Positions 375 through 20,805 of a stretch of DNA of 64,000 bases are shown piece after piece (position 1 is the first letter of the stretch; the number at the start of each line of letters is the position of its first letter). The position numbers were made by a program, and so were the translations under genes. The notes under the pieces are model-generated. The model saw only the letters and a program-made list of their open reading frames with translations. It was not told the DNA's origin and ran no database searches. The stretch spans positions 124,001-188,000 of IMG/VR virus record IMGVR_UViG_3300023184_000024. One strand, given 5' to 3'.

Positions 375-450
<76 letters not shown>

Positions 451-457
451 AACATAT

Positions 458-533
<76 letters not shown>

Positions 534-541
534 ATTTCTTA

Positions 542-633: not shown

Positions 634-641
634 TCAAGTTT

Positions 642-715
642 GTATCCATAGTGTAATGGCAGCATCGCGGTCTCCAAAACCGTCAGTCTAGGTTCGAGTC
701 CTAGTGGGTACGCCA
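642..715 (+). tRNA. tRNA-Trp(CCA)
   Basis: GCGGT-CT CCA AA-ACCGT, G73, CCA. Confidence 0.95.
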
Positions 716-731
716 AATAAAGGAGCATAGT

Positions 732-1337
732 ATGCCAGCAGTATTTTTAGTCAGTGATACACACTTCGGACACGCTGGTGTGTGTCGCTTCATGCACCCC
801 GATGATCCTGAAGTAAAATTACGGCCGTGGACTGATCCCGATGAGATGGATGAGGAAATGGTGCGACGATGGAACGACCGTGTGCGACCCAACGACAAGG
901 TCTACCATTTGGGCGATGTTGTCATCAACCGTAAGGCCATGAAAACCTTGCATCGCTTGAATGGTGACAAGGTGTTGATACGCGGCAACCATGACATCTT
1001 CCGTGACGAGGAGTACAGAGAACACTTTCGTGAGTTGCGAGCATACCATGTCATGAACGGAATGATCTTGAGTCATATTCCTGTGCACGAAGCCAGCTTG
1101 GGCAGGTTTGGTACAAACATTCACGGACACTTGCACGCCAGTCGTGTAAAGAAAGTGCGTGGCTACGATGTCGAAACAGGTACCATGTTGTACAGCAACG
1201 AGATTGATCCACGCTACCATTGTGTCTGCGTAGAACAAACCGACTACACGCCCATCTTGTTTGAAGATGTGATCAAACGCATTGAAGCAGAAGGCGGTAG
1301 TGTGGGATTTAAAAACGGCAACGGACCAACTATGTAA
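732..1337 (+). CDS. calcineurin-like metallophosphoesterase
   Basis: SDTHFGH, HLGD, RGNHD, HGHLH motifs; AAGGAG RBS. Confidence 0.9.
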   Translation: MPAVFLVSDTHFGHAGVCRFMHPDDPEVKLRPWTDPDEMDEEMVRRWNDRVRPNDKVYHLGDVVINRKAMKTLHRLNGDKVLIRGNHDIFRDEEYREHFRELRAYHVMNGMILSHIPVHEASLGRFGTNIHGHLHASRVKKVRGYDVETGTMLYSNEIDPRYHCVCVEQTDYTPILFEDVIKRIEAEGGSVGFKNGNGPTM

Positions 1338-1342
1338 TACAT

Positions 1343-1417
1343 CGCGGGGTGGAGAAGTGGTAACTCATCGGGCTCATAACCCGAAGATCGACGGTTCGAA
1401 TCCGTCCCCCGCAACCA
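1343..1417 (+). tRNA. initiator tRNA-fMet(CAT)
   Basis: C1:A72 mismatch, GGG/CCC anticodon stem, CAT, CCA. Confidence 0.95.
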
Positions 1418-1418
1418 A

Positions 1419-1883
1419 TTACTGAGTAATTTGCCCTGTTACAGCATCCACATGCACAGGTTGGCGATCAGCAAATGTAAAATCATAAAAAGGATTGCCT
1501 CGATAATCAACAGTTTGGCGTAATCTACAGAACAACCAAACATTTGTGATACCTGCTTTGGTCATAGCCTGTTGTGCTTGAGCACAACTCAGTGTAGGTG
1601 GATATACAAATGCCTGACACTCAGCCACACGAGAGTCATCAAAAGTGGGACCAGTGGCATTGCCCGTAATGTCAACAGTTATAGCATAAGGCTTGGTATC
1701 TTCGGATCCTTGCCAGCAGGTATACATAGTGCCATTATGGTCAGCCTCAGCAAGATAAAATTTAGATCCGTTTTGATGTAGATCCATAAGGCTTTTGGCT
1801 CCCCAGATCTGTTGATCAAAACTCAAGGGAGACAACAACCTTAGTCGTCGTAAATACTGTTTTATACGTGTTATTATTGACAT
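1419..1883 (-). CDS. hypothetical protein
   Basis: 154-aa ORF with upstream AAAGGA and TAAATA on minus strand; C-terminal VHVDAVTGQI is PepSY-like. Confidence 0.65.
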   Translation of the reverse strand: MSIITRIKQYLRRLRLLSPLSFDQQIWGAKSLMDLHQNGSKFYLAEADHNGTMYTCWQGSEDTKPYAITVDITGNATGPTFDDSRVAECQAFVYPPTLSCAQAQQAMTKAGITNVWLFCRLRQTVDYRGNPFYDFTFADRQPVHVDAVTGQITQ

Positions 1884-1936
1884 AATTACATTTCCTTTTG
1901 TTGATAATACTTATTTAATTAATGTTAAACATCAAT

Positions 1937-2011
1937 GCCTGGTTAGTTCAGCGGTAGAACTCCGTCTTTACACGGCGGCTGTCGGCGGTTCGATCCCGTC
2001 ACCAGGTACCA
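1937..2011 (+). tRNA. tRNA-Val(TAC)
   Basis: CCGTC-TT TAC AC-GGCGG, CCA. Confidence 0.95.
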
Positions 2012-2068
2012 ATTTGACATTTAGCCTAATAGGTTGAATATTTTCAGTACTCAACTGTATAATTGTAT

Positions 2069-2797
2069 ATGTTGAAATATGTGTTATTAACTCTAGCAAT
2101 GATTGCCCCGGCCACAACTGTGGCTGATTGGGAATGGTCAAACAATTTAACTGCCAAAAGTTGGTTGGTTGCAGACGGCAACGGAGTAATACTCCAAAGC
2201 AATAACATCAATGAATCTAGAAGCATTGCCAGCATTACCAAGTTGATGACAGCAATGACTGTGATCGACGCTGGGCAGAACCCAAAAGAAATCATAGGGA
2301 AGTTTACCAGAGCACAGCATATACAGTTGGCTCTTGTTAGATCCAGCAATGAATCTGCTATTGCATTATGCGACAAATATCCTGGCGGGAAACCCAGTTG
2401 TATTAGAGACATGAATCAAAAAGCAATAGCAATGGGCATGCACAACACTAAGTTTGTTGAAGCGTCTGGCCTGAGTCCAATGAACATCAGTACTGCAACT
2501 GATTTATTAGAATTAGTTCTTTCGGCTAGTTATTACCCCGAAATTGTCAAAGCAAGTAAAACTCCACAAATAAAAATTCAAATCAGAAAGCAGTGGCTTT
2601 TCTTTGACAATACCAATCCAATCATCGGCAAACGCCATAATTTCATTGTGAGTAAAACTGGCATAACAAATGCCGCAGGCGGGTGTATTGTAATGATGCT
2701 AGACACCGAAGTCGGAAGGCGTGTTGTTGTTGTGCTCGGAAGCAAGAACGGCCAGACTAGGATACCCGAAGCTGAGTTTATTGCAACTCAGCACTGA
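2069..2797 (+). CDS. D-alanyl-D-alanine carboxypeptidase/endopeptidase (peptidase S11)
   Basis: signal peptide, SITK (SxxK), SSN (SxN), KTG motifs. Confidence 0.9.
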   Translation: MLKYVLLTLAMIAPATTVADWEWSNNLTAKSWLVADGNGVILQSNNINESRSIASITKLMTAMTVIDAGQNPKEIIGKFTRAQHIQLALVRSSNESAIALCDKYPGGKPSCIRDMNQKAIAMGMHNTKFVEASGLSPMNISTATDLLELVLSASYYPEIVKASKTPQIKIQIRKQWLFFDNTNPIIGKRHNFIVSKTGITNAAGGCIVMMLDTEVGRRVVVVLGSKNGQTRIPEAEFIATQH

Positions 2798-2827
2798 TTG
2801 TGTTGTATTTAAACAACACCTATGTGG

Positions 2828-2856
2828 TTGACCAGAAATGCTCATTTTGCTATAAT
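2828..2856 (+). promoter_or_regulatory. sigma70-type promoter P1 of RNA operon
   Basis: TTGACC-17-TATAAT with extended -10 TG. Confidence 0.85.
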
Positions 2857-2925
2857 AGAAACAAGTTAAGAAATTAACTGATGTTGCAAAAGACCCAGGA
2901 AGTTGTAGGGTTTTTGCAAAATGAA

Positions 2926-2954
2926 TTGACCGGTATATGCCATTGTGTTATACT
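2926..2954 (+). promoter_or_regulatory. sigma70-type promoter P2 of RNA operon
   Basis: TTGACC-17-TATACT with extended -10 TG. Confidence 0.8.
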
Positions 2955-2979
2955 AGAGACTAGTTAGAAATTAACTAGA

Positions 2980-2991
2980 TGTTCTTTAAAA
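2980..2991 (+). promoter_or_regulatory. boxA-like antitermination site
   Basis: TGTTCTTTAAAA, right after a hairpin downstream of P2; resembles rrn boxA TGCTCTTTAACA. Confidence 0.7.
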
Positions 2992-3029
2992 AATTATTTT
3001 TCGTATAGTAGTCTCGGACTAGTTCCGGG

Positions 3030-3274
3030 CACTATATGTAAACGCATCGGGTTACCAACCCAGTAGGCAACTTGGCAAGAGACTAATCTGTGGCCGCACA
3101 GACTCTTCCAAGTTACATGAAAGATGGAAACGAAGCCGCAAGGTGGATACTGTACAATCGCGCTGGAACTAGTTGGTCTGTAATGTGTTTGGCAAACAAG
3201 TCCGTGGACGGCACGGTAGGGCAGGTTTAAAACTGCGATCGTTGTCAAACATCCCTATGTGTTTTCATATAGTG
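3030..3274 (+). ncRNA. unidentified structured RNA, about 245 nt (contains copy 2 of the stem element)
   Basis: closing stem CACTATATG-T-AAACGCAT / ATGTGTTT-T-CATATAGTG, with several internal hairpins and GNRA loops. Confidence 0.7.
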
Positions 3275-3280
3275 AATTTT

Positions 3281-3416
3281 TAATGTTGTTAGTTCTGCCT
3301 TCTGTAAGCCCTGGGGGAAACGTCAACCCTGAGTAACTATGTGTATAAACGGTACGTCCGGCCGGCAATTCCGTTGAGCATAGCAAATAGTATAGTTGGC
3401 AGAACTAACAATATTA
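3281..3416 (+). ncRNA. unidentified structured RNA, about 136 nt
   Basis: 19-bp terminal stem 3281-3299/3398-3416, inner CTATG/CATAG and AACGG/CCGTT helices. Confidence 0.6.
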
Positions 3417-3492
3417 GGTCTTAAAGTGTTCATGGACGCACGACGGCTTGTCACGCCGTAAGAGTGGGGATCGTTACCCCCTAAGACCGCCA
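3417..3492 (+). tRNA. tRNA-Asp(GTC)
   Basis: ACGGC-TT GTC AC-GCCGT, G73, CCA; atypical T loop ATCGTTA. Confidence 0.9.
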
Positions 3493-3497
3493 AGTTT

Positions 3498-3569
3498 TGT
3501 GGTAAGGAAAGTAAAAGGAGAATGGGCAAGTTGTTGGCTAGTCAACAACCAGATACCTCACCTGCCACA
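3498..3569 (+). ncRNA. small hairpin RNA candidate
   Basis: TGTGGTA/TGCCACA closing stem, GTTGTTGGC/GTCAACAAC apical stem. Confidence 0.4.
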
Positions 3570-3580
3570 TTTTAATTTTT

Positions 3581-3644
3581 GAGAGCCACATCGCCTGGAT
3601 ACCTCCTCCTCTTAGGAGCACTGGGTCCTGCAACCGTGGCTCTC
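3581..3644 (+). ncRNA. small hairpin RNA candidate with anti-SD-like motif
   Basis: GAGAGCCAC/GTGGCTCTC stem, CTCCT/AGGAG apical stem. Confidence 0.5.
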
Positions 3645-3652
3645 CCTTATTT

Positions 3653-3727
3653 GCTCGATTCGTCTATCGGTTAGGACATGCGGTTTTCATCCGCATAAGA
3701 GCGGTTCGACTCCGCTATCGAGTACCA
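3653..3727 (+). tRNA. tRNA-Glu(TTC)
   Basis: TGCGG-TT TTC AT-CCGCA, CCA. Confidence 0.95.
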
Positions 3728-3732
3728 TACAT

Positions 3733-3817
3733 GGAGATGCCGCCGCAATGGTGTGGCAGGGGACTGTAAATCCTCCGACTTCGGTCACGATAGGTTCGAT
3801 CCCTATCATCTCCACCA
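3733..3817 (+). tRNA. tRNA-Tyr(GTA)
   Basis: GGGGA-CT GTA AA-TCCTC, long variable arm, CCA. Confidence 0.95.
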
Positions 3818-4010
3818 GAACGTTCCGAGTGTCTTCGGATACTGTGACCCGCAGGATGAGAAGTAGTGTGACAACTACGGGTGGTAGTCTTCGAACCTAA
3901 AGGCCGCTGGCAATGCGAGAACTGTCCCTGTCGGGAAGCGGGTGGAAGGTACGTGTGAGGGGTATGATAGCGTCATATCTTTCTGTACTATAATTACCGC
4001 CGGGGGATGC
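3818..4010 (+). ncRNA. unidentified structured, probably pseudoknotted RNA, about 190 nt
   Basis: UUCG-capped hairpin, GTAGT/ACTAC hairpin, 3880-3888/3993-4001 stem, crossing ACCCGC/GCGGGT pairing. Confidence 0.65.
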
Positions 4011-4011
4011 A

Positions 4012-4084
4012 GAGCATATTGAAGCACATTGTGTGTCGGCTTGCTGATAAACTTTAAGTAGAGATAGTGTGTTTCAATATGCTT
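4012..4084 (+). repeat. inverted-repeat stem, copy 3 of AAACACAYT/AGTGTGTTT element
   Basis: GAGCATATTGAAGCACATT pairs with AGTGTGTTTCAATATGCTT. Confidence 0.7.
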
Positions 4085-4089
4085 TTTAT

Positions 4090-4167
4090 GCACAGGTGGC
4101 AGAGTGGTCCAATGCAACGGATTGCAAATCCGTAAAACCGTGAGTTCAAATCTCACCCTGTGTTCCA
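4090..4167 (+). tRNA. tRNA-Cys(GCA)
   Basis: ACGGA-TT GCA AA-TCCGT, U73, CCA. Confidence 0.95.
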
Positions 4168-4175
4168 ATAAGGTT

Positions 4176-4251
4176 GCCTCCATAGCTCAGTTGGTAGAGC
4201 ACTGTGTTGATAACGCAGTGGTCCCTGGTTCGAGTCCAGGTGGCGGCACCA
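4176..4251 (+). tRNA. tRNA-Ile(GAT)
   Basis: CTGTG-TT GAT AA-CGCAG, CCA. Confidence 0.95.
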
Positions 4252-4266
4252 TGTAAGATATAAATT

Positions 4267-4340
4267 GCGGGGTTCGTATAGTGGTAATACCTCAGCCTTC
4301 CAAGCTGATGCGGAGAGTTCGATTCTCTTACCCCGCTCCA
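4267..4340 (+). tRNA. tRNA-Gly(TCC)
   Basis: TCAGC-CT TCC AA-GCTGA, U73, CCA. Confidence 0.95.
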
Positions 4341-4345
4341 TACAC

Positions 4346-4541
4346 CCGGTTACACTTTGACGTCTAAAGTGGGTGGGGCAGTCACCATAGAAAGTGCTGG
4401 GTTTGTAGTGCAACGACCATCCGTACTCTGTCGTGGAGTGGCGGGAACGCATTAGGGGGAGAACACAACTTAAACCCAAAGCGAAAAATGTGTGGACAGA
4501 GTAACAGCTCGGTCCGGGGCCTATGTGGTGTAGGTAGCCGG
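4346..4541 (+). ncRNA. unidentified multi-branched RNA, about 196 nt
   Basis: CCGGTTAC/GTAGCCGG closing stem; CACTTT/AAAGTG, GGTG/CACC, TGGGTTT/AAACCCA, TAGTGC/GCATTA, GGAC/GTCC helices. Confidence 0.7.
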
Positions 4542-4554
4542 ACACTTATAAAAT

Positions 4555-4630
4555 GCGGGATTAGCTCAGTTGGTAGAGCGATACCTTGCCAAGGTATAGG
4601 TCGAGAGTTCGAGCCTCTTATCCCGCTCCA
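4555..4630 (+). tRNA. tRNA-Gly(GCC)
   Basis: ATACC-TT GCC AA-GGTAT, CCA. Confidence 0.95.
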
Positions 4631-5424
4631 TCAAATTCTAAATACTCAAATTCCAATGTTGGTTGTTGTACTGCAATCAGTAGATCGTCAGTGTTGACGA
4701 CTCGCCCCACAACCGGGTGTCCGGTGAATTGTTTTATTTTTTCAATTCCGTGTGTGGCAACAAACTCTGGTGCATGAGTATTGAACCAGTTGATGTAACT
4801 GTTCCAATCAAAATAATTGTCAGTGCCTGTGTTAGTATTGATTACTAGATTAATGCCGGGCTTGACTTGATCATGGAAGCGGCAAGTTTGCATGACGTTG
4901 GTGTCGTCTTGTTGTTCATACAGATACAACGGATGATGCCCTACATGCGGATTTTGCAAACGTATATCACCAAATTCAAGATTGATCTTGGCAGGGTATT
5001 CCAGTGGATCTATTGCAAACATTGTATCGTTGAACCATTCAATCTGCAACCAACTATTACGAAGGCTTCCGCTTTCAAGTGCGTGTAGTGCAAAATGTAG
5101 TTCGTGTAATATGTCATCATGTTCTGCAGGTATGTTTTCAAATCCATTGGCAAGATAAGCTTCAATGTCCTTGTGTAATTTTGTGGTCACTGCAACATTG
5201 TAAGAGTCACGTTGCCAATCCCAACCCAATTCTTGTTTGGCACGATGCACAAGTTTTTCAAAATATTGTATGGTGTATTTTTGAGGATCACGAAAAATAG
5301 CGTGTGGGTCAACGGTCCATTGTTGTTTAATCAAAGATAGATATTTCTTTGCCAAATTTGTATCGTTTAACTTGCAATACAAGGGCGGAATGTTATAAAA
5401 TTTTACAACAAAATCATGAGTCAT
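4618..5424 (-). CDS. hypothetical protein
   Basis: 268-aa ORF, TAAATA just upstream; stop lies within tRNA-Gly 3' end. Confidence 0.75.
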   Translation of the reverse strand: MTHDFVVKFYNIPPLYCKLNDTNLAKKYLSLIKQQWTVDPHAIFRDPQKYTIQYFEKLVHRAKQELGWDWQRDSYNVAVTTKLHKDIEAYLANGFENIPAEHDDILHELHFALHALESGSLRNSWLQIEWFNDTMFAIDPLEYPAKINLEFGDIRLQNPHVGHHPLYLYEQQDDTNVMQTCRFHDQVKPGINLVINTNTGTDNYFDWNSYINWFNTHAPEFVATHGIEKIKQFTGHPVVGRVVNTDDLLIAVQQPTLEFEYLEFDGAG

Positions 5425-5460
5425 TGATTATTTACAAGTTATTTTTGAACCGTTAGTTTT

Positions 5461-5535
5461 CTGGCCATAGTATAATGGATAATACAGCGGCCTTCTAAGC
5501 CGTCAATCTAGGTTCGATTCCTAGTGGCCGGACCA
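5461..5535 (+). tRNA. tRNA-Arg(TCT)
   Basis: GCGGC-CT TCT AA-GCCGT, CCA. Confidence 0.95.
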
Positions 5536-5545
5536 ATTAACCCGT

Positions 5546-5621
5546 GGGGGTGTAGCTCAGTTGGGAGAGCGTTTGCTTTGCAAGCAAAATGTCGCAGGTT
5601 CGATCCCTGTCACCTCCACCA
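5546..5621 (+). tRNA. tRNA-Ala(TGC)
   Basis: G3:U70, TTTGC-TT TGC AA-GCAAA, CCA. Confidence 0.95.
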
Positions 5622-5668
5622 TTTAATAATATTGTCACATTTAAAATGATATATACAGGTATACAACC

Positions 5669-6103
5669 ATGCTACATTTAATCAAAAGCGTCACTGACTC
5701 CTTAATGGACTTTCTCAGTCAAGATCCTGTGCGTCCGCACATTCCCAGATCTGTTAGAGTTGGCAATAATCGAGACATTTTTGTGGCTCGCAAAGACGAT
5801 CAAAGCGTCAAAGCAATAACCTGTGTTAGTTATCAAAACATAATCCCCACTTCCGAAGGTGAATTGTTTGAACTCACCGAGTCTCCAGATGTTGTGGTAT
5901 TTTACACTATCTGGAGTTACGAGCCAGGTGCAGGTCGCGAGTTAATTTTTGAAGCCCGGGATTGGATTCAAAAAAATCGACCCGAAATTAAAAGATTTGT
6001 TACTCTAAGCCCTCCCACAGAAATGGCTCGTCGGTTTCACATCAAGAATGGTGCATTAGTACATCGCATCAATCCCGAAACTGTTAACTACGAGTATCAG
6101 TGA
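5669..6103 (+). CDS. hypothetical protein, GNAT-like fold
   Basis: VFYTIWS..GAGRELI, FVTLSP, ARRFHIKNGA motifs. Confidence 0.6.
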   Translation: MLHLIKSVTDSLMDFLSQDPVRPHIPRSVRVGNNRDIFVARKDDQSVKAITCVSYQNIIPTSEGELFELTESPDVVVFYTIWSYEPGAGRELIFEARDWIQKNRPEIKRFVTLSPPTEMARRFHIKNGALVHRINPETVNYEYQ

Positions 6104-6111
6104 TCCTATAT

Positions 6112-6189
6112 TGGGGTTTCGCCAAGTTGGTCTAAGGCACCGGATTTTGATTCCGGCATCCCTAGGTTCGAATCCTAGAACCCCAGCCA
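6112..6189 (+). tRNA. tRNA-Gln(TTG)
   Basis: U1-A72, CCGGA-TT TTG AT-TCCGG, CCA. Confidence 0.95.
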
Positions 6190-6264
6190 GGTAATGTAGC
6201 ATAATGGTAGTGCACCTCCTTCATACGGAGCAAAGTGCTAGTTCGACTCTAGTCATTACCACCA
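6190..6264 (+). tRNA. tRNA with CAT anticodon (elongator Met, or Ile2)
   Basis: GGTAATG/CATTACC acceptor, loop TT CAT AC, CCA; directly abuts tRNA-Gln. Confidence 0.85.
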
Positions 6265-6269
6265 AAATT

Positions 6270-6346
6270 CGGAGTGTAGCACAGCCCGGTAGTGCGCCTG
6301 CTTTGGGAGCAGGAGGTCCAAGGTTCGAATCCTTGTATTCCGACCA
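6270..6346 (+). tRNA. tRNA-Pro(TGG)
   Basis: C1-G72, CCTGC-TT TGG GA-GCAGG, CCA. Confidence 0.95.
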
Positions 6347-6353
6347 TTTTTAC

Positions 6354-6429
6354 GGAGTTGTTAGTGTAACGGTTAACACCACGGATTGTGATTCCGTTAA
6401 TACGGGTTCGATTCCCGTACGACTCCCCA
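6354..6429 (+). tRNA. tRNA-His(GTG)
   Basis: encoded G-1:C73, ACGGA-TT GTG AT-TCCGT, CCA. Confidence 0.95.
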
Positions 6430-6451
6430 AAGCTCAAGATAAATAATTTAT

Positions 6452-8011
6452 ATGTTTGATAATACTAAACCCAATATTGTAATCTTAACCGACCATACCG
6501 ACCCTTTACTGATGCTCAAGCTGTTTGGTGCCAGTAAAGTTGCCGCAGAATTGCGCATGGCCGGTTTTCAAGTGGCAGTGATTAATCACCTACATCTATT
6601 TACAGTAGAAGAAATTAAAAACATACTAGTACAACTAGTCAGTGATCAAACTGTGTTTGTTGGCACTAGTCCGTTTTTCTATAAAAATATCGAGAATGTG
6701 TTGACTGATCATGAATTTGATCACGAGCAAGGCGGTAAAAAATATGGAACCAAAGAATTAGGCAGTTTTTTGCCACACGGAATCAAGTACAATCAAGAAA
6801 TCAAGCACTTGATCAAAGGAATTAACCCCAACTGTAAGTTTGTCATTGGCGGCCCCGACGCACAAGATCGACAGTACAACAAAGACTACGATTATGTCAT
6901 TGTTGGCTACGGAGACAACAGTGGTCCCAATTTGGCCAGACATTTGGCCTACGGCGAACCTTTGGAAAAATCGCATCGTAGTTTGTACGGACCAGTCATT
7001 GTCGACGATAGATTGGCATCTAATTATAACTTTAATTCGTCGCTGATGAGCTACGAAGATCATGATGCTCTGCTGCCTGGAGAGACCATGCTGACCGAAA
7101 TTGCACGTGGTTGTATTTTCCGCTGTGGCTTTTGCAGTTACCCTCTGAATGGTAAGAAGAAATTAGATCATATTAAATTAGATGACATTCTCTATCAAGA
7201 ATTCATGGACAACTACGAAAAGTACGGTATAACAAGATACATGTTCAGTGATGATACCTACAACGACAGTGTAGATAAAATTAAGATGATGCATGCAGTC
7301 AGTAAACGTTTGCCATTTCAACTTGAATACTGGGCTTGCTTGCGTTTAGATTTACTAGGAGCACACCCCGAAACAATCGATTTGCTGTATGAAAGCGGTC
7401 TTCGTGCCATGATGTTTGGCATCGAAACACTGCATGAAAAAGCCAGTAAGATTATTGGCAAGGGCGGCAGTCGAGCCAAGCAAATTGCCACCATCAATTA
7501 CATCAAAGAAAAGTACGGCAACAATGTAATGATGCACGGGTCCTTTATATTTGGACTTCCTGAAGAGCCAATAGAGTCTATGTTGGACACAGCTGATCGA
7601 TTGGTGTCAGGAGAAATCAAACTTGACTCCTGGGCCATTCATGCATTTAGATTACAACACAAAGGTATGAGTTATACCAGCGAGTTTGATTTGAATCCTG
7701 AAAAGTATGGATACGAACCATACGATAATACATTAGGCGGCAATCGCCTAATTTGGAAAAACAAGTTTACCAACTTTTACGAGTGCGAGAAACTGGCACA
7801 AGAAACACTCAAGCGCGGCGCCATTAAACTAAAACTTAACAAAATTGCCGGTGTAACCAGTATGTTTATTGCAGGGCTGGGTTTTGATTTACAGTACTCG
7901 GCTAATAAAAACGTTGTAGACTTTGACTGGCATCAAATTGATTTGGCCAAACAACGACGCAGTGCAGAATACAAAGAATTGTTGTACAAACAACTCAACA
8001 TTCAACCATAA
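6452..8011 (+). CDS. B12-binding-type radical SAM protein
   Basis: ARGCIFRCGFC (CxxxCxxC), VIGGP, FSDDT, FGIET, FIFGLP motifs. Confidence 0.85.
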   Translation: MFDNTKPNIVILTDHTDPLLMLKLFGASKVAAELRMAGFQVAVINHLHLFTVEEIKNILVQLVSDQTVFVGTSPFFYKNIENVLTDHEFDHEQGGKKYGTKELGSFLPHGIKYNQEIKHLIKGINPNCKFVIGGPDAQDRQYNKDYDYVIVGYGDNSGPNLARHLAYGEPLEKSHRSLYGPVIVDDRLASNYNFNSSLMSYEDHDALLPGETMLTEIARGCIFRCGFCSYPLNGKKKLDHIKLDDILYQEFMDNYEKYGITRYMFSDDTYNDSVDKIKMMHAVSKRLPFQLEYWACLRLDLLGAHPETIDLLYESGLRAMMFGIETLHEKASKIIGKGGSRAKQIATINYIKEKYGNNVMMHGSFIFGLPEEPIESMLDTADRLVSGEIKLDSWAIHAFRLQHKGMSYTSEFDLNPEKYGYEPYDNTLGGNRLIWKNKFTNFYECEKLAQETLKRGAIKLKLNKIAGVTSMFIAGLGFDLQYSANKNVVDFDWHQIDLAKQRRSAEYKELLYKQLNIQP

Positions 8012-8014
8012 TCG

Positions 8015-8043
8015 TTGACTGCTGACTCAACATCTGTTATAAT
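8015..8043 (+). promoter_or_regulatory. sigma70-type promoter
   Basis: TTGACT-17-TATAAT with TG extension, upstream of tRNA-Leu. Confidence 0.85.
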
Positions 8044-8054
8044 ACAATAATTAA

Positions 8055-8131
8055 GCCCAGGTGATGGAATTGGTATACGTGTTGGTCTTAGAAGCCAAAT
8101 TTTGCGAGTTCGAGTCTCGCCCTGGGCACCA
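8055..8131 (+). tRNA. tRNA-Leu(TAG), short variable loop
   Basis: TTGGT-CT TAG AA-GCCAA, only 5-nt variable region, A73, CCA. Confidence 0.9.
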
Positions 8132-8139
8132 ATAAATGT

Positions 8140-8225
8140 GCGACTGTGGTGAAATAGGTAGACACAAAAGACTTAAAATCTTTCGCTGTAATGGCATGCC
8201 GGTTCGATTCCGGCCAGTCGCACCA
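8140..8225 (+). tRNA. tRNA-Leu(TAA)
   Basis: AAAGA-CT TAA AA-TCTTT, long variable arm, CCA. Confidence 0.95.
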
Positions 8226-8229
8226 ATAT

Positions 8230-8303
8230 GCTCCTGTAGTATAATGGTAATACACGCCCTTGGTAAGGGCGAGCCACAAGTTCAATTCTTGTCTGGAGCA
8301 CCA
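8230..8303 (+). tRNA. tRNA-Thr(GGT)
   Basis: CGCCC-TT GGT AA-GGGCG, CCA. Confidence 0.95.
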
Positions 8304-8307
8304 TATT

Positions 8308-8457
8308 ATGAAACTGTTCGAAGCAACAATAAAAATTAACGGTCGAGAATTCAAAGATCGTGTGGGCGCAAATAATGCCGAAGAAGCACGATTGCTTTTA
8401 CAACAACGTCATGGGCCTAGGGCAGTGCCTTATTTGCCCAAAATGATACCAAGTTAA
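8308..8457 (+). CDS. small hypothetical protein (49 aa)
   Basis: MKLFEATIKING... exactly fills the gap between two tRNAs. Confidence 0.6.
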   Translation: MKLFEATIKINGREFKDRVGANNAEEARLLLQQRHGPRAVPYLPKMIPS

Positions 8458-8459
8458 CA

Positions 8460-8549
8460 GGAAGCGTGGTCGAGTCTGGTTTATGGCAACAGTCTTGAAA
8501 ACTGTCGACTCGCAAGGGTCCGTGAGTTCGAATCTCACCGCTTCCACCA
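8460..8549 (+). tRNA. tRNA-Ser(TGA)
   Basis: ACAGT-CT TGA AA-ACTGT, long variable arm, CCA. Confidence 0.95.
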
Positions 8550-8564
8550 ATATGGAGTATTACT

Positions 8565-8864
8565 ATGTCAAACGAAAACGATAAATTCAACCATAGCAAG
8601 CGTTTGCTCAAAGATGACAATGCAGTCAACAAGCAGGTTAAAATTGCTAAATCACATGGGTTGACCAACAAGGACAAGGCAGTAAAAGAGCCACATCGTT
8701 TGGCCAAACATCATGCCATGGACTGTGGCCGTCCTGGGTGTATGCTATGTGGTAACCCACGCAAAACGTTTAAAGAACTCACTGCTCAGGAAAAACGACT
8801 GTATCAAGATGTTGACAATCCACCATCTAAGCATACAAACGGTACTTTGCCTCCTGAAGAATAA
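8565..8864 (+). CDS. basic hypothetical protein with Cys cluster
   Basis: GGAG RBS; CGRPGCMLCGNPR putative zinc-binding motif. Confidence 0.75.
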   Translation: MSNENDKFNHSKRLLKDDNAVNKQVKIAKSHGLTNKDKAVKEPHRLAKHHAMDCGRPGCMLCGNPRKTFKELTAQEKRLYQDVDNPPSKHTNGTLPPEE

Positions 8865-8867
8865 TAT

Positions 8868-8943
8868 GCCGCGGTAGCTCATCAGGTAGAGCAGCAGACT
8901 GAAAATCTGTGTGTGGCTGGTTCGAGTCCAGCTCGTGGCACCA
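8868..8943 (+). tRNA. tRNA-Phe(GAA)
   Basis: GCAGA-CT GAA AA-TCTGT, CCA. Confidence 0.95.
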
Positions 8944-8947
8944 ACAA

Positions 8948-9022
8948 CGGTCCTTAGTTCAATGGATAGAATGCTTGGCTTCGAACCAAGCGGTGTGGGT
9001 TCGATTCCTGCAGGACCGGCCA
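8948..9022 (+). tRNA. tRNA-Arg(TCG)
   Basis: CTTGG-CT TCG AA-CCAAG, CCA. Confidence 0.92.
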
Positions 9023-12117: not shown

Positions 12118-12756
12118 TTGCCGGTACATTTAATCAATCCACTGCCGATATATCAAGAAGAGTCTGGCTATACTTTGTCAGACTCTGAATTATCGATACT
12201 CAACAATATCAAATATAACTCAGTGAGCAAGCCGTTTATCTGGGAATATGCATCAGAGTATACAATATTAGATCACCCTGGACTGGCAGATCTAAAGGCT
12301 GTATTACAACAGCACTTGGATAGGTATCGCAAAGAAATATGTGGTGTGGTTGATCAAGAGTTTTATATTACCAACAGTTGGTTAAGTAAAATCGAAGCTA
12401 TCCAAGGTAACTTATCTGAACATTCGCACGACAACAGTTTAATCAGTGGTGTGTTTTACATTGATGTCCCGCCCGACACTCCTTTGTGTTTTCGTAATCA
12501 TAGTCAGATTTTTAAAAAACATGATTTTTATTTTTCAAACAGTGTTGATACACAATACCGACAAGAAACATATTGTGTACCAGTAAAATCTGGAGACATT
12601 GTGCTATTCCCAAGTTGGGTAGATCATTACGTTGAAAAAAATCAAACAAGTCATGTTCGAAGAAGTTTGGCATTTGATAGTTTTGTTCGAGGGCTGTTTG
12701 ATGGTAAAATGTTGCACAACGATAAAACTGGTTTTAGTACGCTAATGATTAAATAA
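12118..12756 (+). CDS. putative 2OG-Fe(II) oxygenase (TIGR02466-like)
   Basis: HSH.NS.ISGVFY, GDIVLFPSWVDHYV, RRSLAF motifs. Confidence 0.8.
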   Translation: MPVHLINPLPIYQEESGYTLSDSELSILNNIKYNSVSKPFIWEYASEYTILDHPGLADLKAVLQQHLDRYRKEICGVVDQEFYITNSWLSKIEAIQGNLSEHSHDNSLISGVFYIDVPPDTPLCFRNHSQIFKKHDFYFSNSVDTQYRQETYCVPVKSGDIVLFPSWVDHYVEKNQTSHVRRSLAFDSFVRGLFDGKMLHNDKTGFSTLMIK

Positions 12757-12760
12757 AAGT

Positions 12761-13083
12761 TAAGACTGTATGAAGTAGAGAGAAAAGGATTCAAGACGCG
12801 GGGGCAGTGCCCGCCAGGTCCACCAAAAACACACTGCCAGTCGCGCTGGTTGTATGGTACTATTCTAGAAATAAGGTTCGAATCCTTAGTGTGTTTTTGA
12901 TGGGCCTGACACAGGATCGATTGGGTCAAGAGTATTGAAATGGACAGTCCGGCAATGTAGAAGCCGTTAGGGTTGGGGGAACTCGGCCGAAGACACAAAA
13001 ACCGTAAATGCAAACGACGAACAGTTCGCTTTAGCCGCCTAAACTCGGCTTAGGGTAGGAAATACCTCGTAACAGAAACCACC
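12761..13083 (+). ncRNA. ssrA: two-piece (circularly permuted) tmRNA
   Basis: acceptor piece ends ...GCGGG-GGCAGTG-CCCGC-CAGGTCC-ACCA (12825) before the coding piece starting GGGCCTG (12902); G3:U70; tag ANDEQFALAA* at 13010-13042; 5' end approximate. Confidence 0.92.
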
Positions 13084-13107
13084 AGCCCGCTTCGGCGGGC
13101 TTTTTTT
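13084..13107 (+). terminator. intrinsic terminator
   Basis: AGCCCGC-TTCG-GCGGGCT followed by a T run. Confidence 0.9.
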
Positions 13108-13120
13108 CTTGGAGTAAACT

Positions 13121-13360
13121 ATGGGCAATCAAACCGATTATTTTGAACGCATTGGCTACAAACCCACCTGGTATCTAGGAGATAGGGTGTTTGGGCATTG
13201 GAATAAAATTCCTTTTGTTGGAACAGTGGGCAATGATACTGTGATTAATCATACTGAAGGGCCACGGATCACTATTCATTTAGACCTTCCCATCAAGTAC
13301 AAGAGTCAAATACACAATATTATTGTAGTTAATCATAAAGATATCAAGCTTTACAAGTAA
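13121..13360 (+). CDS. hypothetical protein
   Basis: GGAG RBS, 79-aa ORF. Confidence 0.7.
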   Translation: MGNQTDYFERIGYKPTWYLGDRVFGHWNKIPFVGTVGNDTVINHTEGPRITIHLDLPIKYKSQIHNIIVVNHKDIKLYK

Positions 13361-16278: not shown

Positions 16279-17427
16279 ATGCATCTCATAGACTATCCAG
16301 TCACTGATCGTTTCGGCTACTATCAAATTGGCCAACAAAAATTTTATTCCAAATATCTGGCCATTCAGGAACATACCCGAACAGGCATACATCCCGAGTG
16401 GCATTTTAATGACGAAGTTTTTTCTAGCTACAATTGGAAGGAAGAGCCTGCGGAATCGCTGGACAAACTGTATCAACAACGTGCTGAACAGCTAAGAAAC
16501 AAATATGATTATCTTGTGTTGTTGTACAGTGGAGGCTCAGATAGCCACAACATATTAGATGTTTTTATTAACAACAACATCAAGCTTGACGAAATTTGTA
16601 CCTATCACAATTTAAGTGCGCCCGGTCAACAAGATCTTGGCACCAATGCTGAAGTTCTACGTGCGGCATTTCCATACATGGAACATGTACGATCTACGCA
16701 CCCTGAAATACGTCAACGCATTGTGGACATAACCCCAAACCAGGTATCCTATTGGCTCAATGACCAATACGGTCAACTTTGGCTGGAAAACCTTTCCAAC
16801 AATTTTCATTTGGGAAGTATTCAAAGTCAAATAAAATACTCGCTGGATCCCGAGTACGCACAAATGCGAGATCGTGGCGTAAAAATTGGATTTATTGTGG
16901 GCACAGATAAGCCCAGAGTCTGGCAGATTGATGGTCGCTGGTGTGTAAGGTTCATTGATACATTTACAGATTTTATATTTCATTGCCAAGACGATGGTAC
17001 TGAGTTTTTTTATTGGTCACCGGACTTGCCCAAACTAATTATTAAACAGTCGCACATTGTCAAACGTTATCTTGAGCAGGCCACAGAATCAACACCGTTT
17101 GTTAGTACCACAAAAAAAATTGAGTTGGCCTGCAAGGAACACAATGGAAAAAAACTTTGGCTAAGTGACCATGGTGTACACAGTTTGCTTTACCCAACCT
17201 GGAACATCAATACATTTAGTCTAGGCAAAGATCCGCACAAGGCCTGGGGAATTAGAGATATCTGGTTTAGAGATACTCTACACAAAGAAAATCATCAAAG
17301 CTTTAAAAACTACAAACATCAATTTGATACTTGGTGGAATTCGGTTCCGGACTATTGGAAAAATGATCCAGTTGATCGTAATCGAGGACAAAAGCTTTGT
17401 TGGAGCAGACCGTATTATCTTAATTGA
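16279..17427 (+). CDS. PP-loop (adenine nucleotide alpha hydrolase-like) protein
   Basis: LLYSGGSDS motif. Confidence 0.65.
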   Translation: MHLIDYPVTDRFGYYQIGQQKFYSKYLAIQEHTRTGIHPEWHFNDEVFSSYNWKEEPAESLDKLYQQRAEQLRNKYDYLVLLYSGGSDSHNILDVFINNNIKLDEICTYHNLSAPGQQDLGTNAEVLRAAFPYMEHVRSTHPEIRQRIVDITPNQVSYWLNDQYGQLWLENLSNNFHLGSIQSQIKYSLDPEYAQMRDRGVKIGFIVGTDKPRVWQIDGRWCVRFIDTFTDFIFHCQDDGTEFFYWSPDLPKLIIKQSHIVKRYLEQATESTPFVSTTKKIELACKEHNGKKLWLSDHGVHSLLYPTWNINTFSLGKDPHKAWGIRDIWFRDTLHKENHQSFKNYKHQFDTWWNSVPDYWKNDPVDRNRGQKLCWSRPYYLN

Positions 17428-17434
17428 GGAAAAC

Positions 17435-18325
17435 ATGTTAAAAAAATTCGCAACATCAATGTTAATCGCAGTTAGTTCAACTGTGTGGGCACAGTCAGAA
17501 CCTTTGCGTTTTCTGTTGCCATATGCACCTGGTGGATCAATTGATAAAATTGCCAGGGCCATTGAAAAGCCCTTGGAAAAAGAACTAGGACGACCGGTTG
17601 TGGTTGACTACAAGGCAGGTGCTGGTGGTCTAGTTGGCGCACAGTGGCTTAAAAATCATCAAAGCAAGACACCAACAATCATGCTTATGCCTGCGCCAAG
17701 TTTGGCATTCACTGATGAAGTCGACGCGGTTGCGGACTTCCCCCCAGTTTATTATGTTGGATACATTCCTGAGATGCTGGTGGCCCGGCCAGAATTTAAA
17801 TACAATACCTTGTCCCAGCTCATGAACGACAAGAATCGAGGAAAACTCAACTTGGCCACAGTTGCCAAAGGAGACCCCACTTCCACATTGCATGCTCGAC
17901 TGAACGACAGTAATGCTGTGCTGGTACCATACAAAGGTTCTAGTCAAAGCATAGTTGATGTAATGGCCGGGCATGTGGACCTTGCTGGCACATCAACCAC
18001 TGCGGTCCTGGAAATGATAGCTGCCGGTAAATTAAAAGGCCTAGGCGTTGGTGGTCCACGGAGATCGTCGGCGTTGCCCAACATACCAACATTTGATGAG
18101 CAAGGCATTGGTTGGAAGGCCACTCTAAGGTATTTTATCTTTGTAAATCGCTCTGCCGATGCCGACGAAGTTAAAACCATTGTATCTGCCCTGAATCGTG
18201 CTGTACGTAGTCCGGAGTTTGTGCAATCTAAAAAACAAATGGATCTGCATGACGAACCGTACCAAGGTACTGTTGCCCAATTTTTCTCACTGGCACTAGA
18301 ACAAACACGGCAAAACCGCCCTTGA
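17435..18325 (+). CDS. Bug/TctC tripartite tricarboxylate transporter substrate-binding protein
   Basis: signal peptide, PYAPGGSID..AR, VDYKAGAGG, VPYKG, LPNIPTFDEQG; GAGGA RBS. Confidence 0.9.
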   Translation: MLKKFATSMLIAVSSTVWAQSEPLRFLLPYAPGGSIDKIARAIEKPLEKELGRPVVVDYKAGAGGLVGAQWLKNHQSKTPTIMLMPAPSLAFTDEVDAVADFPPVYYVGYIPEMLVARPEFKYNTLSQLMNDKNRGKLNLATVAKGDPTSTLHARLNDSNAVLVPYKGSSQSIVDVMAGHVDLAGTSTTAVLEMIAAGKLKGLGVGGPRRSSALPNIPTFDEQGIGWKATLRYFIFVNRSADADEVKTIVSALNRAVRSPEFVQSKKQMDLHDEPYQGTVAQFFSLALEQTRQNRP

Positions 18326-19602: not shown

Positions 19603-19839
19603 ATGTCGAACCCAACCCCTCTCTATACCACTGTAAGGATCAGCTTTGATCCTTACAGCCATGATCAAGTACAAGACTTGCTTCGTAAAGTTCAGCGCGA
19701 CTTTGGCCGAGACCGATCACGTTGGTATTACCAAAGTCCGTTACTTGGCATGGACACCCAGGTCAATACTTGGACTGTTGATTTTTGCTTTCGAGAGCCA
19801 CATGATGCCACGTTGTTCGGACTCAAGTACTTGAGGTGA
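19603..19839 (+). CDS. hypothetical protein
   Basis: 78-aa ORF ending in F.....DATLFGLKY, resembling the C-termini of 20838..21206 and 25362..25685. Confidence 0.6.
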   Translation: MSNPTPLYTTVRISFDPYSHDQVQDLLRKVQRDFGRDRSRWYYQSPLLGMDTQVNTWTVDFCFREPHDATLFGLKYLR

Positions 19840-20805
19840 TTGTATAATGGTTTCAAGTTGGCCATCGATGCTACAACTGTCAGAATTCTTAAACTCTGAG
19901 AGTGCCGGCACCAACCATTCGTAGTCTACTTTGTAGTTGTGTCTTATTCGATTCTCCAACCAAAATTGATTGGTCATATGAGTCCAAGGACTGATGCCTT
20001 GCAGTCCAGAAAAGGTAACTCCCATGTCTTTGCATAGATCACGATAACTTAGAATTTCTTTGTAGTTTCCGTATTGTACAACAAATTGAGTTATAACAGG
20101 AATTCCTAAATCAATCACTTGCTTCATTCCTTTAACCATAATACCAAAGTTACCGCCACGTATTTTTTGATATGTTTCAGGGGTGCTAGCATCCATAGAC
20201 ACTGTTATTCCAGAAATTCGATTTTTAATCTTGGCTATTAGATCAATGTTTTTTGATAGTAGATTACCGTTTGAATTTATACTCAATTTGAAACACGATG
20301 GCAATCTATCTGAACTTAGGAAATCCAAATATGCAGTACTCATCAGCATTTCTCCGCGGCCATCCCCTTGTATCAAAACGGTGTGATCAAAATTTTGATA
20401 TTCCTCAATCAGACTGTTCAGTACGTGTCTGGCACCTGGATTGATTTCTTTGGTATGATAAAAATCACTGCGACAACTTGGGCAAGCAAGATTACAACTT
20501 CGGTCCAGATCTTGCAAATAGATATTCGTAGGCAAAGAAGGTGTTGGTATATTCGATAAATCAGTTACCGAATCCATGGACCAGTATCGTCCACACACAT
20601 TCGAATCACAGAATTTAAAGCTTTGATTATAAATGCTGTTTCTGAATTCTTGGGTTTTAGGTGATGCAAAAATATCGTGGAGTGTTTGGCTATTCAAATT
20701 CCCAGCAGGACCTTGTGTTTGCCAGCCTGGACATAAACATAGCACTACATCACCGTTCTGACTAATATTAACAGTGTTCCAAGGGCTATCACAAAATTTT
20801 AACAT
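19741..20805 (-). CDS. radical SAM protein with N-terminal SPASM/twitch-like domain
   Basis: FCDSPW..CLC, CNLACPSC, SMDA..ETY..IRGG; paralogous to 43617..44693. Confidence 0.85.
   Translation of the reverse strand: MLKFCDSPWNTVNISQNGDVVLCLCPGWQTQGPAGNLNSQTLHDIFASPKTQEFRNSIYNQSFKFCDSNVCGRYWSMDSVTDLSNIPTPSLPTNIYLQDLDRSCNLACPSCRSDFYHTKEINPGARHVLNSLIEEYQNFDHTVLIQGDGRGEMLMSTAYLDFLSSDRLPSCFKLSINSNGNLLSKNIDLIAKIKNRISGITVSMDASTPETYQKIRGGNFGIMVKGMKQVIDLGIPVITQFVVQYGNYKEILSYRDLCKDMGVTFSGLQGISPWTHMTNQFWLENRIRHNYKVDYEWLVPALSEFKNSDSCSIDGQLETIIQSPQVLESEQRGIMWLSKAKINSPSIDLGVHAK

What the first reader, a model, noticed from the sequence alone, without database searches (positions are those of the whole stretch)
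12761..13107. Phage-encoded circularly permuted (two-piece) tmRNA
The CCA-ending acceptor half precedes the GGGCCTG 5' half. G3:U70, a GGCAGTG T-loop, tag ANDEQFALAA, an upstream TAAATA and a terminator are all visible. Two-piece tmRNAs are established in Alphaproteobacteria, some Betaproteobacteria and some cyanobacteria. A phage copy is often missed by annotation, informs on the host, and could be a route for spreading the permuted form. No smpB is in this window.
Basis: partly seen in the sequence, partly recalled or inferred. Interest (0 to 1): 0.65.

Follow-up and report, generated by a model that had tools for sequence, protein, structure and literature searches.

The report
Two-piece tmRNA gene in jumbo phage
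A 353-kb lake-water phage carries a complete, circularly permuted ribosome-rescue RNA (tmRNA) gene; phage copies of this kind are already known, but this one has an odd T-loop and a tRNA-shaped spacer between its two halves.

Summary
ARAGORN calls a permuted tmRNA with tag ANDEQFALAA. Rfam gives tmRNA_permuted 111.3 bits (cut-off 47) and beta_tmRNA 84.0 bits (cut-off 84). The CCA-ending acceptor piece (12764-12825) precedes the coding piece (12902-13107). G3:U70, A73, encoded CCA, an Ala resume codon, an ...ALAA tag and an intrinsic terminator are all present.

The window lies in a complete 352,754-bp virus record with terminal repeats, a terminase and 29 tRNAs. It has no SmpB.

More than 150 other IMG/VR contigs carry related genes. 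Their stems keep pairing through compensatory changes, and their tags keep a degron-like end, so the gene is under selection as a working tmRNA. Freshwater metatranscriptome contigs match the two mature pieces.

Phage two-piece tmRNAs are already published (Caulobacter phages, cyanophages, Melnitz), so the kind is not new. Three things are unusual here:
- The T-loop GGCAGUG is non-canonical.
- The 5' end type was not found as a tmRNA in 185,579 bacterial species genomes.
- The 76-nt intervening segment is closed by a stem of about 10 bp and folds like a tRNA. In relatives the same slot holds real small genes.

The phage also encodes ClpP, ClpX and a ClpA-like ATPase.

The parts
12746..12754 (+). 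Possible weak promoter: TG-n-TTAAAT (extended -10 type), with no recognisable -35.
   Evidence: It aligns in register with the TTGACA-17-TATAAT promoters that sit 9 nt upstream of GACUG in many relatives. It did not pass the sigma-70 scan. The upstream 2OG-Fe(II) oxygenase ORF ends at 12756, so read-through transcription is equally possible.
12764..12825 (+). Acceptor piece (about 62 nt). It comprises the 5' strands of the P2 helices (12764-12794), the T-arm (12798-12814) with the non-canonical T-loop GGCAGUG (12803-12809), the acceptor 3' strand (12815-12821), discriminator A12822 and the encoded CCA (12823-12825).
   Evidence: Rfam RF04321 alignment with high posterior probabilities. ARAGORN 3' tRNA domain. 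Compensatory changes in the acceptor stem, T-stem and P2a across relatives.
12826..12901 (+). Intervening segment (76 nt), absent from the mature RNA. It has a closing stem (about 12826-12835 with 12888-12897), a D-like hairpin (12836-12850), a canonical T-arm hairpin (12872-12888) and 4 unpaired nt, UGAU (12898-12901), just before G+1.
   Evidence: MFE fold -17.7 kcal/mol, z -1.76. ARAGORN calls a 71-nt cloverleaf (12827-12897) only at the relaxed 80% threshold. Rfam finds no tRNA hit. A closing stem of 8 bp or more in the same register occurs in 81 of 90 unique relatives' spacers, against 5 of 1800 shuffles.
12902..13107 (+). Coding piece. It comprises the acceptor 5' strand GGGCCUG (12902-12908, with G12904:U12819 as G3:U70), the D-loop analogue (12909-12920), the P2 3' strands (12921-12949), hairpins at 12950-12966 and 12971-12988, and the tag frame and terminator listed below.
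   Evidence: Covariation in the hairpin 12971-12988 and in the terminator stem across 63 unique relatives.
13010..13042 (+). Tag reading frame: resume codon GCA, ten codons reading ANDEQFALAA, then stop TAA.
   Evidence: ARAGORN. In relatives that were not selected by tag, the frame stays open and most tags end in LAA or MAA, with a few ending in VA or NA.
13084..13107 (+). Intrinsic terminator: a 7-bp GC-rich stem with a 4-nt loop, then a T-run.
   Evidence: Terminator scan. The stem covaries in relatives.

Best explanation
This is a working ssrA gene of the two-piece (circularly permuted) form, carried by a freshwater jumbo myovirus.

Inferred processing. One precursor is transcribed from about 12762 to the terminator at 13107. 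Host tRNA-processing enzymes cut it: RNase P 5' of G12902, and 3' trimming back to CCA12825. The 76-nt intervening segment is discarded or released. The 62-nt acceptor piece and the roughly 200-nt coding piece stay paired through the acceptor stem and the P2 helices.

Inferred function. Host AlaRS charges the RNA through G3:U70 and A73. Host SmpB and EF-Tu deliver it to ribosomes stalled on broken mRNAs. The nascent chain receives Ala plus the tag ending in ALAA and is degraded by ClpXP or ClpAP. The phage also encodes that protease system itself. The benefit to the phage would be to keep ribosomes free while it breaks down host mRNA and runs its own 29-tRNA translation programme.

What is shown: the gene anatomy, its conservation, its structural covariation, and the presence of family members in RNA libraries.

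What is inferred: the cleavage sites, charging, use of host SmpB, and tagging.

A secondary and weaker proposal concerns the tRNA-shaped intervening segment. It may present a second RNase P site immediately 3' of CCA, so that a single cut leaves the acceptor 3' end almost mature.
For: - Detection: ARAGORN permuted tmRNA; RF04321 111.3 bits against a cut-off of 47, and RF01850 84.0 bits.
- Identity elements: G3:U70, A73, CCA, an Ala resume codon and an ALAA end are visible directly in the sequence.
- Relatives: more than 150 related genes lie on IMG/VR viral contigs.
- Compensatory changes: the acceptor stem occurs in 4 types, all compensated, with G3:U70 invariant. The T-stem occurs in 5 compensated types. 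P2a occurs in 14 types, nearly all compensated.
- Tags: among relatives chosen by T-arm rather than by tag, tags vary but keep AN(D/E)...(F/Y) and mostly end in LAA or MAA.
- Expression: contigs from four freshwater metatranscriptome studies cover 12752-12841 and 12886-13107. They do not cover the flanking genes or the spacer core.
- Phage context: complete virus record; terminase 53.6% identical to that of Pseudomonas jumbo phage PA5oct; 29 tRNAs.
- Degradation machinery: ClpP (311.7 bits, cut-off 249), ClpX (508 bits, cut-off 359) and a ClpA-like ATPase are phage-encoded.
Against: - The T-loop GGCAGUG lacks the U54, psi55 and A58 equivalents of normal tRNA and tmRNA T-loops, so elbow geometry and SmpB or EF-Tu handling could differ.
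- The phage has no SmpB, so function depends on a host protein recognising a divergent tRNA-like domain.
- No clear promoter was found.
- The RNA evidence comes from assembled contigs of relatives. It shows neither transcript ends nor two separate pieces, and DNA carry-over in those libraries cannot be excluded.
- The cloverleaf of the spacer is sub-threshold, its folding z-score is only -1.76, and no relative shares it, so covariation cannot be tested.
Confidence: 0.8

Rival explanations
1. Decoy or inhibitor. The RNA is made but does not tag proteins. Instead it soaks up host SmpB, AlaRS or EF-Tu and shuts down host trans-translation. This was reported for the tag-less tmRNA-like RNA of mycobacteriophage DS6A expressed in E. 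coli.
For: The odd T-loop and the absence of phage SmpB. The DS6A precedent is cited in PMC11915505.
Against: The tag frame is intact. Across relatives it varies at the codon level while keeping an Ala start and, in most cases, an LAA or MAA end. A decoy would not need that. The phage also brings ClpXP, the protease that reads such tags.
Confidence: 0.1
2. Decaying passenger. A tmRNA gene picked up from a host is no longer functional and is drifting.
For: The T-loop is non-canonical, the promoter is weak, and the beta model scores only at threshold.
Against: The same architecture, including the same T-loop, recurs on more than 119 viral contigs with compensatory changes elsewhere in the molecule. 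The D-loop analogue differs in step with the T-loop type. Family members appear in RNA libraries.
Confidence: 0.05
3. Not phage DNA. The region is host ssrA at a prophage junction, an attP-type fragment, or a mis-assembly.
For: tmRNA genes are common prophage integration sites (established knowledge; also stated in PMC11915505).
Against: The gene is complete rather than a 3' fragment. It lies 136 kb inside a 353-kb record with direct terminal repeats, rated 100% complete, between phage-type genes. Its 19-nt 5' end is in no tmRNA among 185,579 bacterial species genomes; the two matches are inside transporter genes.
Confidence: 0.02

Closest known systems
Betaproteobacterial two-piece tmRNA (Rfam RF01850; the general permuted model is RF04321)
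   Same: The gene order is the same: acceptor piece, spacer, coding piece. It shares the P2 pairing between pieces, a tag of the ANDE.FALAA type and a 3' terminator hairpin. Relatives with the same tag and normal T-loops score 101-120 bits on RF01850.
   Different: The window scores exactly at the cut-off (84.0 bits). Its T-loop is GGCAGUG rather than UUCGAUU. Its D-loop analogue differs, and its spacer is much longer: 65 nt where the model has an 18-nt insert. Sister sequences with the same T-loop score better on the alpha model. This 5' end type was not found in bacterial species genomes.
Published phage two-piece tmRNAs: Caulobacter phages CcrSC and CcrBL9, cyanophages such as S-SSM6a, Pelagibacter phage Mosig, OM43 phage Melnitz (PMC9004378)
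   Same: These are phage-borne permuted ssrA genes, mostly from aquatic phages, often large genomes with tRNA sets and no SmpB requirement stated. Melnitz even carries an extra RNA element (a glutamine riboswitch) inside its ssrA gene.
   Different: Those are alpha- or cyano-type, and none in that list comes from a Burkholderiales host. blastn of this gene against 50,697 GenBank phage records found nothing.
Permuted tmRNA with an intact tRNA-Ala gene in its intervening sequence, from a nominally archaeal MAG (PMC11915505)
   Same: A tRNA-shaped element lies in the excised spacer of a permuted tmRNA gene. The authors described it as a unique feature.
   Different: In that case it is a high-scoring tRNA. 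Here it is only a sub-threshold cloverleaf with a canonical T-arm, a weak anticodon stem and no CCA.
Mycobacteriophage one-piece tmRNAs and the DS6A tag-less form
   Same: These are phage-encoded ssrA-like RNAs that depend on host factors.
   Different: They are standard (unpermuted) genes. DS6A lacks a tag frame, whereas this gene has one.

Membership tests
tmRNA (ssrA) | tRNA-like domain: a 7-bp acceptor stem plus a T-arm, recognised by dedicated detectors. | tested here: met
   ARAGORN. RF04321 111.3 bits against a cut-off of 47.
tmRNA (ssrA) | Alanine identity: a G3:U70 wobble, discriminator A73 and a CCA end. | tested here: met
   G12904:U12819, A12822 and CCA 12823-12825. G3:U70 is invariant in all 4 acceptor-stem variants of relatives.
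tmRNA (ssrA) | A short internal reading frame with an Ala resume codon and a hydrophobic degron end. | tested here: met
   13010-13042 reads ANDEQFALAA then stop. The frame is conserved, with varying codons, in relatives.
tmRNA (ssrA) | Canonical T-loop (U54, psi55, C56 ... A58). This is typical of the family rather than strictly defining. | tested here: not met
   The loop is GGCAGUG; only the C56 equivalent is kept.
tmRNA (ssrA) | An SmpB partner encoded alongside. | tested here: not met
   No PF01668 match in the whole 352,754-bp phage. Host SmpB would be needed.
tmRNA (ssrA) | Alanylation and trans-translation tagging activity. | not testable with these tools
   This needs biochemistry or infected-cell proteomics.
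Two-piece (circularly permuted) tmRNA | The 3' tRNA half with CCA is encoded upstream of the 5' half and tag frame. | tested here: met
   The CCA end is at 12825 and G+1 is at 12902.
Two-piece (circularly permuted) tmRNA | The precursor is cut into two RNAs that stay base-paired. | tested here: inconclusive
   Inter-piece helices are present and covary. RNA-library contigs cover both pieces but cannot show ends. Some span a different spacer, so they may be precursors or DNA.
Beta subtype (RF01850) | A score at or above the curated cut-off of the beta model, higher than for the other subtype models. | tested here: inconclusive
   The window scores 84.0 bits against a cut-off of 84. Sister sequences with the same T-loop score 52-81 bits on the alpha model instead. 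Relatives with normal T-loops are clearly beta, at 101-120 bits.
tRNA (for the 76-nt intervening segment) | A cloverleaf that passes standard tRNA detectors. | tested here: not met
   There is no ARAGORN call at the default or 90% threshold, only at 80%. Rfam finds no tRNA hit; the best match is the tRNA-like mascRNA model at 18.1 bits, below its cut-off.

The most novel reading that the evidence does not exclude
The spacer of phage permuted tmRNA genes may be a cargo slot rather than junk.

A strong tmRNA promoter would drive transcription, and host tRNA-processing enzymes would excise whatever sits between CCA and G+1. In this phage the cargo would be a 71-76-nt tRNA-shaped RNA. It could be a processing guide that gives RNase P a site right after CCA, or a free tRNA mimic with a role of its own.

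In relatives the same slot holds real small genes. Their Shine-Dalgarno sequence lies in the closing stem, and their stop codon ends one base before G+1.
Probability: 0.3. Interest if true: 0.7.

Novelty: new variant of a known kind. Interest (0 to 1): 0.45.

Why it matters
Phage tmRNAs are one of the clearest signs that large phages manage the host's translation quality control. This one extends the published set in three ways:

- It shows a beta-derived, phage-only lineage that is common in lakes.
- Its tRNA-like domain tolerates a T-loop that departs from the canonical T-loop consensus. That makes it a natural test case for what SmpB, EF-Tu and AlaRS really need.
- The phage brings both the tagging RNA and the ClpXP/ClpA machinery that reads the tag. 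This suggests a self-contained tag-and-destroy module lacking only SmpB.

The spacer observations point to an undescribed way of expressing small RNAs and small proteins from inside a stable-RNA gene.

The family may also explain a puzzle in tmRNA databases, where beta-type permuted tmRNAs are scattered through MAGs of unrelated phyla and archaea. Mis-binned phage contigs could account for them.

Tried and rejected
- **Cultured phages.** blastn of the gene against 50,697 GenBank phage records found no match.
- **Bacterial source.**
  - The 19-mer GGGCCUGACACAGGAUCGA gave 2 hits in 185,579 species genomes. Both lie inside transporter coding sequences with no tmRNA nearby.
  - A BLAST of the gene against 401 genomes of one gammaproteobacterial class matched only the tag region or the terminator. 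The tag-region hits lie in ordinary one-piece tmRNAs with normal T-loops.
  - A follow-up in the order of one of those genomes covered only 19 genomes and gave nothing above the cut-off.
  - Genome handles carry no taxonomy, so no host genus could be named.
- **Covariation test of the spacer cloverleaf.** Three patterns taken from the window's spacer found no homologous spacer in IMG/VR. One was a chance hit in high-GC DNA. The cloverleaf therefore stays untested.
- **T-loop pairing with the spacer.** GGCAGUG is complementary to CACUGCC at 12832-12838. I rejected this as a regulatory alternative fold, because only the window among 90 unique spacers has it, about what chance gives.
- **The spacer as a real tRNA.** Rejected. 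It shares only a 15-nt T-arm with the phage tRNA-Pro.
- **Transcript ends.** Laying metatranscriptome data gave contigs only, so no ends or strand information.
- **Other RNA families in the spacers.** None were found in the 16 relative loci scanned, including no riboswitch.
- **Other translation-rescue genes in the phage.** No SmpB, RF-1/ArfB, peptidyl-tRNA hydrolase or CCA-adding enzyme.
- **Literature.** The paper on the third two-piece lineage (PMC516066) is not held.

Full report

Yes. ARAGORN reports one permuted tmRNA at 12733-13133 (+) with tag ANDEQFALAA. Rfam gives tmRNA_permuted (RF04321) at 12764-13042 with 111.3 bits against a cut-off of 47. It also gives beta_tmRNA (RF01850) at 12708-13105 with 84.0 bits against a cut-off of 84.

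Reading the sequence gives this anatomy:
- T-arm GCGGG/GGCAGUG/CCCGC at 12798-12814.
- Acceptor 3' strand CAGGUCC at 12815-12821.
- Discriminator A and CCA at 12822-12825.
- A 76-nt intervening segment at 12826-12901.
- Acceptor 5' strand GGGCCUG at 12902-12908, so G12904 pairs with U12819 as G3:U70.
- Resume codon GCA at 13010 and stop TAA at 13040-13042.
- A GC-rich terminator hairpin at 13084-13101 followed by a T-run.

GGCAGUG is not a normal T-loop; the model consensus is UUCGAUU. TAAATA at 12750-12755 has no -35 partner and failed the promoter scan.

**2. Where does it sit?**

The window is bases 124001-188000 of a 352,754-bp IMG/VR virus record with direct terminal repeats, rated 100% complete. 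GC content is 42.4%.

- The genome has a large terminase 53.6% identical to that of Pseudomonas jumbo phage PA5oct. The next best matches are the Sinorhizobium and Agrobacterium jumbo phages.
- It has 29 tRNAs, 27 of them just upstream in the window.
- The immediate neighbours are phage-type genes: a 2OG-Fe(II) oxygenase ending at 12756 and a 924-aa appendage or fibre protein starting at 13444.
- Near-identical DNA occurs in lake and freshwater metagenomes from several studies.
- There is no SmpB anywhere in the phage.
- There is also no CCA-adding enzyme, RF-1/ArfB or peptidyl-tRNA hydrolase.
- The phage does encode a true ClpP, a ClpX equivalog and a 753-aa ClpA-like ATPase.

**3. Is it a working gene? 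Evidence from relatives.**

In 150 of these genes both halves could be located.

Stems keep pairing through compensatory changes:
- Four acceptor-stem types, all Watson-Crick compensated, with G3:U70 invariant.
- Five T-stem types, all compensated.
- Fourteen P2a types, nearly all compensated.
- The outer P2 helix also changes on both sides, as the sequences show.
- A hairpin at 12971-12988 and the terminator stem covary.

Among relatives selected by T-arm and not by tag, the tag varies (ANDSQFALAA, ANDEQFALAA, ANESRFLMAA, ANDSKFALAA and others). It always starts with Ala and mostly ends in LAA or MAA, with a few ending in VA or NA. That pattern means selection on the peptide as a degron.

The T-loop type goes with a particular D-loop analogue. 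GGCAGUG goes with ACACAGGAUCGA, and UUCGACU with CCAUGGUUUCGA. This is only a lineage-level correlation across four or five groups.

Contigs from four freshwater metatranscriptome studies match 12752-12841 and 12886-13107. They do not match the flanking genes or the spacer core. Contigs cannot show ends, and they come from relatives, so this shows the family is present in RNA libraries and nothing more.

**4. How it most likely works.**

Shown: the anatomy and the constraint on it.

Inferred from established tmRNA biology:
- A single precursor is made.
- RNase P cuts 5' of G12902.
- The 3' end is trimmed to CCA12825.
- The two pieces stay paired.
- AlaRS charges the RNA through G3:U70.
- Host SmpB and EF-Tu bring it to stalled ribosomes.
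- The tag sends the product to ClpXP or ClpAP.

Because the phage supplies ClpP, ClpX and a ClpA-like protein itself, it carries the tagging RNA and the reader of the tag, and lacks only SmpB. I put this core model at 0.8.

The rivals are a decoy (0.1), a decaying gene (0.05) and host DNA or an artefact (0.02). They fit the conserved tag frame, the covariation and the genomic position poorly.

**5. The intervening segment.**

In the window it folds with a closing stem of about 10 bp that starts right after CCA and ends 4 nt before G+1. It also has a small D-like hairpin and a canonical T-arm hairpin, UAAGG/UUCGAAU/CCUUA, at 12872-12888.

ARAGORN draws a 71-nt cloverleaf (12827-12897) only at a relaxed threshold. 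Rfam's tRNA model does not match. At the same relaxed threshold, 11 of 90 unique family spacers give tRNA-like calls, against about 1 in shuffles, and none pass the default. It is therefore tRNA-shaped and not a tRNA.

If RNase P accepts it, a cut at 12826/12827 would leave the acceptor piece with one extra base after CCA. That is an attractive idea, but it is untested. No relative shares this spacer.

Family-wide, the spacer is hypervariable: 91 unique versions of 24-2080 nt. Even so, 81 of 90 unique spacers keep a closing stem of 8 bp or more in the same register, against 5 of 1800 shuffles. There are 57 different stem sequences.

**6. Comparison with what is known.**

Two-piece tmRNAs are established in Alphaproteobacteria, a betaproteobacterial lineage and cyanobacteria. 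The merged Rfam model comes from the 2025 database paper (PMC11915505).

Phage copies are documented. A survey of 18,146 phage genomes found 133 unique tmRNA structures, 53 of them two-piece and 50 of those aquatic. They include Caulobacter phages CcrSC and CcrBL9, cyanophages and OM43 phage Melnitz (PMC9004378). Huge-phage surveys also list tmRNAs (PMC7162821).

This copy differs in four ways:
- No GenBank phage record matches it by blastn, and no Burkholderiales-host phage is in the published list.
- Its 5' end type is absent from tmRNAs of 185,579 bacterial species genomes.
- It has the unusual T-loop.
- Its subtype is not clean. The window sits exactly at the beta cut-off, sisters score better with the alpha model, and relatives with the same tag and normal T-loops are clearly beta.

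The 2025 paper mentions a single permuted tmRNA with an intact tRNA-Ala in its spacer, as a unique feature, in a nominally archaeal MAG. In the light of this family, that is probably a phage contig.

**7. Host.**

Only a coarse statement is justified.
- ANDEQFALAA matches only an uncultured entry in ARAGORN's tag table.
- It is one residue from ANDERFALAA (Comamonadaceae, Bordetella, Polynucleobacter, Rhodocyclales) and one from ANDEQFAIAA (Dechloromonas).
- A TctC/Bug-type binding protein gene lies at 17324-18325. From my own knowledge, that family is greatly expanded in Betaproteobacteria.
- The terminase relatives infect Proteobacteria.
- The habitat is lake water.

A freshwater betaproteobacterial host is likely, but no genus can be named.

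**8. Verdict.**

The kind is known. This is a divergent variant with an odd T-loop and a tRNA-shaped spacer, in a phage that also brings ClpXP. Interest is moderate (0.45). The family-level finding that the spacer carries genes is the part most worth following.

Noticed in passing
Relatives: L010:3295-3501(-), L008:9750-10007(+), L109, L139, L087, L003, L071, L072, L098, L088 (spacers between CCA and G+1): About 30 of 91 unique spacers of related phage tmRNA genes hold an ORF of 20-123 aa. An AAGGA ribosome-binding site lies 9-15 nt after CCA, inside the closing stem. In most of them the stop codon ends exactly 1 nt before G+1 of the coding piece. Two products match Pfam families above the cut-off: DUF2061 at 72.6 bits and CxxCxxCC at 26.6 bits. 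Several others are 20-30-aa hydrophobic peptides. I found no published description of protein genes nested in a tmRNA spacer.
   Followed up: partly
Same phage, outside the window: G000:C1:195-788, 325505-326704, 58485-60746, 348693-349271: The phage encodes a true ClpP (NF001368, 311.7 bits, cut-off 249), a ClpX equivalog (508 bits, cut-off 359) and a 753-aa ClpA-like ATPase (818 bits, below its cut-off). It also has a second, weaker ClpP-like protein that may be a head protease. Together with the tmRNA this makes a tag-and-degrade set that lacks only SmpB.
   Followed up: partly
Relatives, 75 nt upstream of the acceptor piece (for example L081, L116, L015, L062, L130; L065, L146, L070): Many relatives have a textbook TTGACA-17-TATAAT promoter ending 9 nt before the acceptor piece. 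Others start directly after a tRNA gene. The window has neither.
   Followed up: yes
window 131-9022 (+); especially 542-633: An array of 27 tRNA genes (29 in the whole phage) covers all 20 amino acids. One 92-nt tRNA with anticodon UAU has a long, class-II-like variable arm, which is unusual for an Ile-type anticodon.
   Followed up: partly
window 6452-8011 (+), 19741-20805 (-), 35481-43620 (-): At least six radical SAM or SPASM-domain proteins occur in the window. One lies inside the tRNA array, and four lie within the 35481-43620 block.
   Followed up: no
window 25604-27710 (+), 32836-34314 (-): A set of sugar-modification genes: an NAD-dependent epimerase/dehydratase, a DegT-type aminotransferase and a Nol-like carbamoyltransferase.
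   Followed up: no
window 51068-63865 (-): A single open reading frame of 4265 aa. It was not analysed.
   Followed up: no
window 17324-18325 (+): A TctC/Bug-family periplasmic binding protein gene sits in the phage (115.7 bits). It is an unusual auxiliary gene and a hint of a betaproteobacterial host.
   Followed up: no
Literature: Supplementary Table 2 of PMC11915505: Beta-type permuted tmRNAs number 658 genome instances. Of these, 594 are in Pseudomonadota and the rest are scattered over unrelated phyla and archaea. Mis-binned contigs of phages like this one could explain the scatter.
   Followed up: no
window 12651-13013 (-): A 120-aa TTG-start ORF runs antisense across the tmRNA gene. Given the RNA-type conservation of the region, it is most likely spurious.
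   Followed up: no
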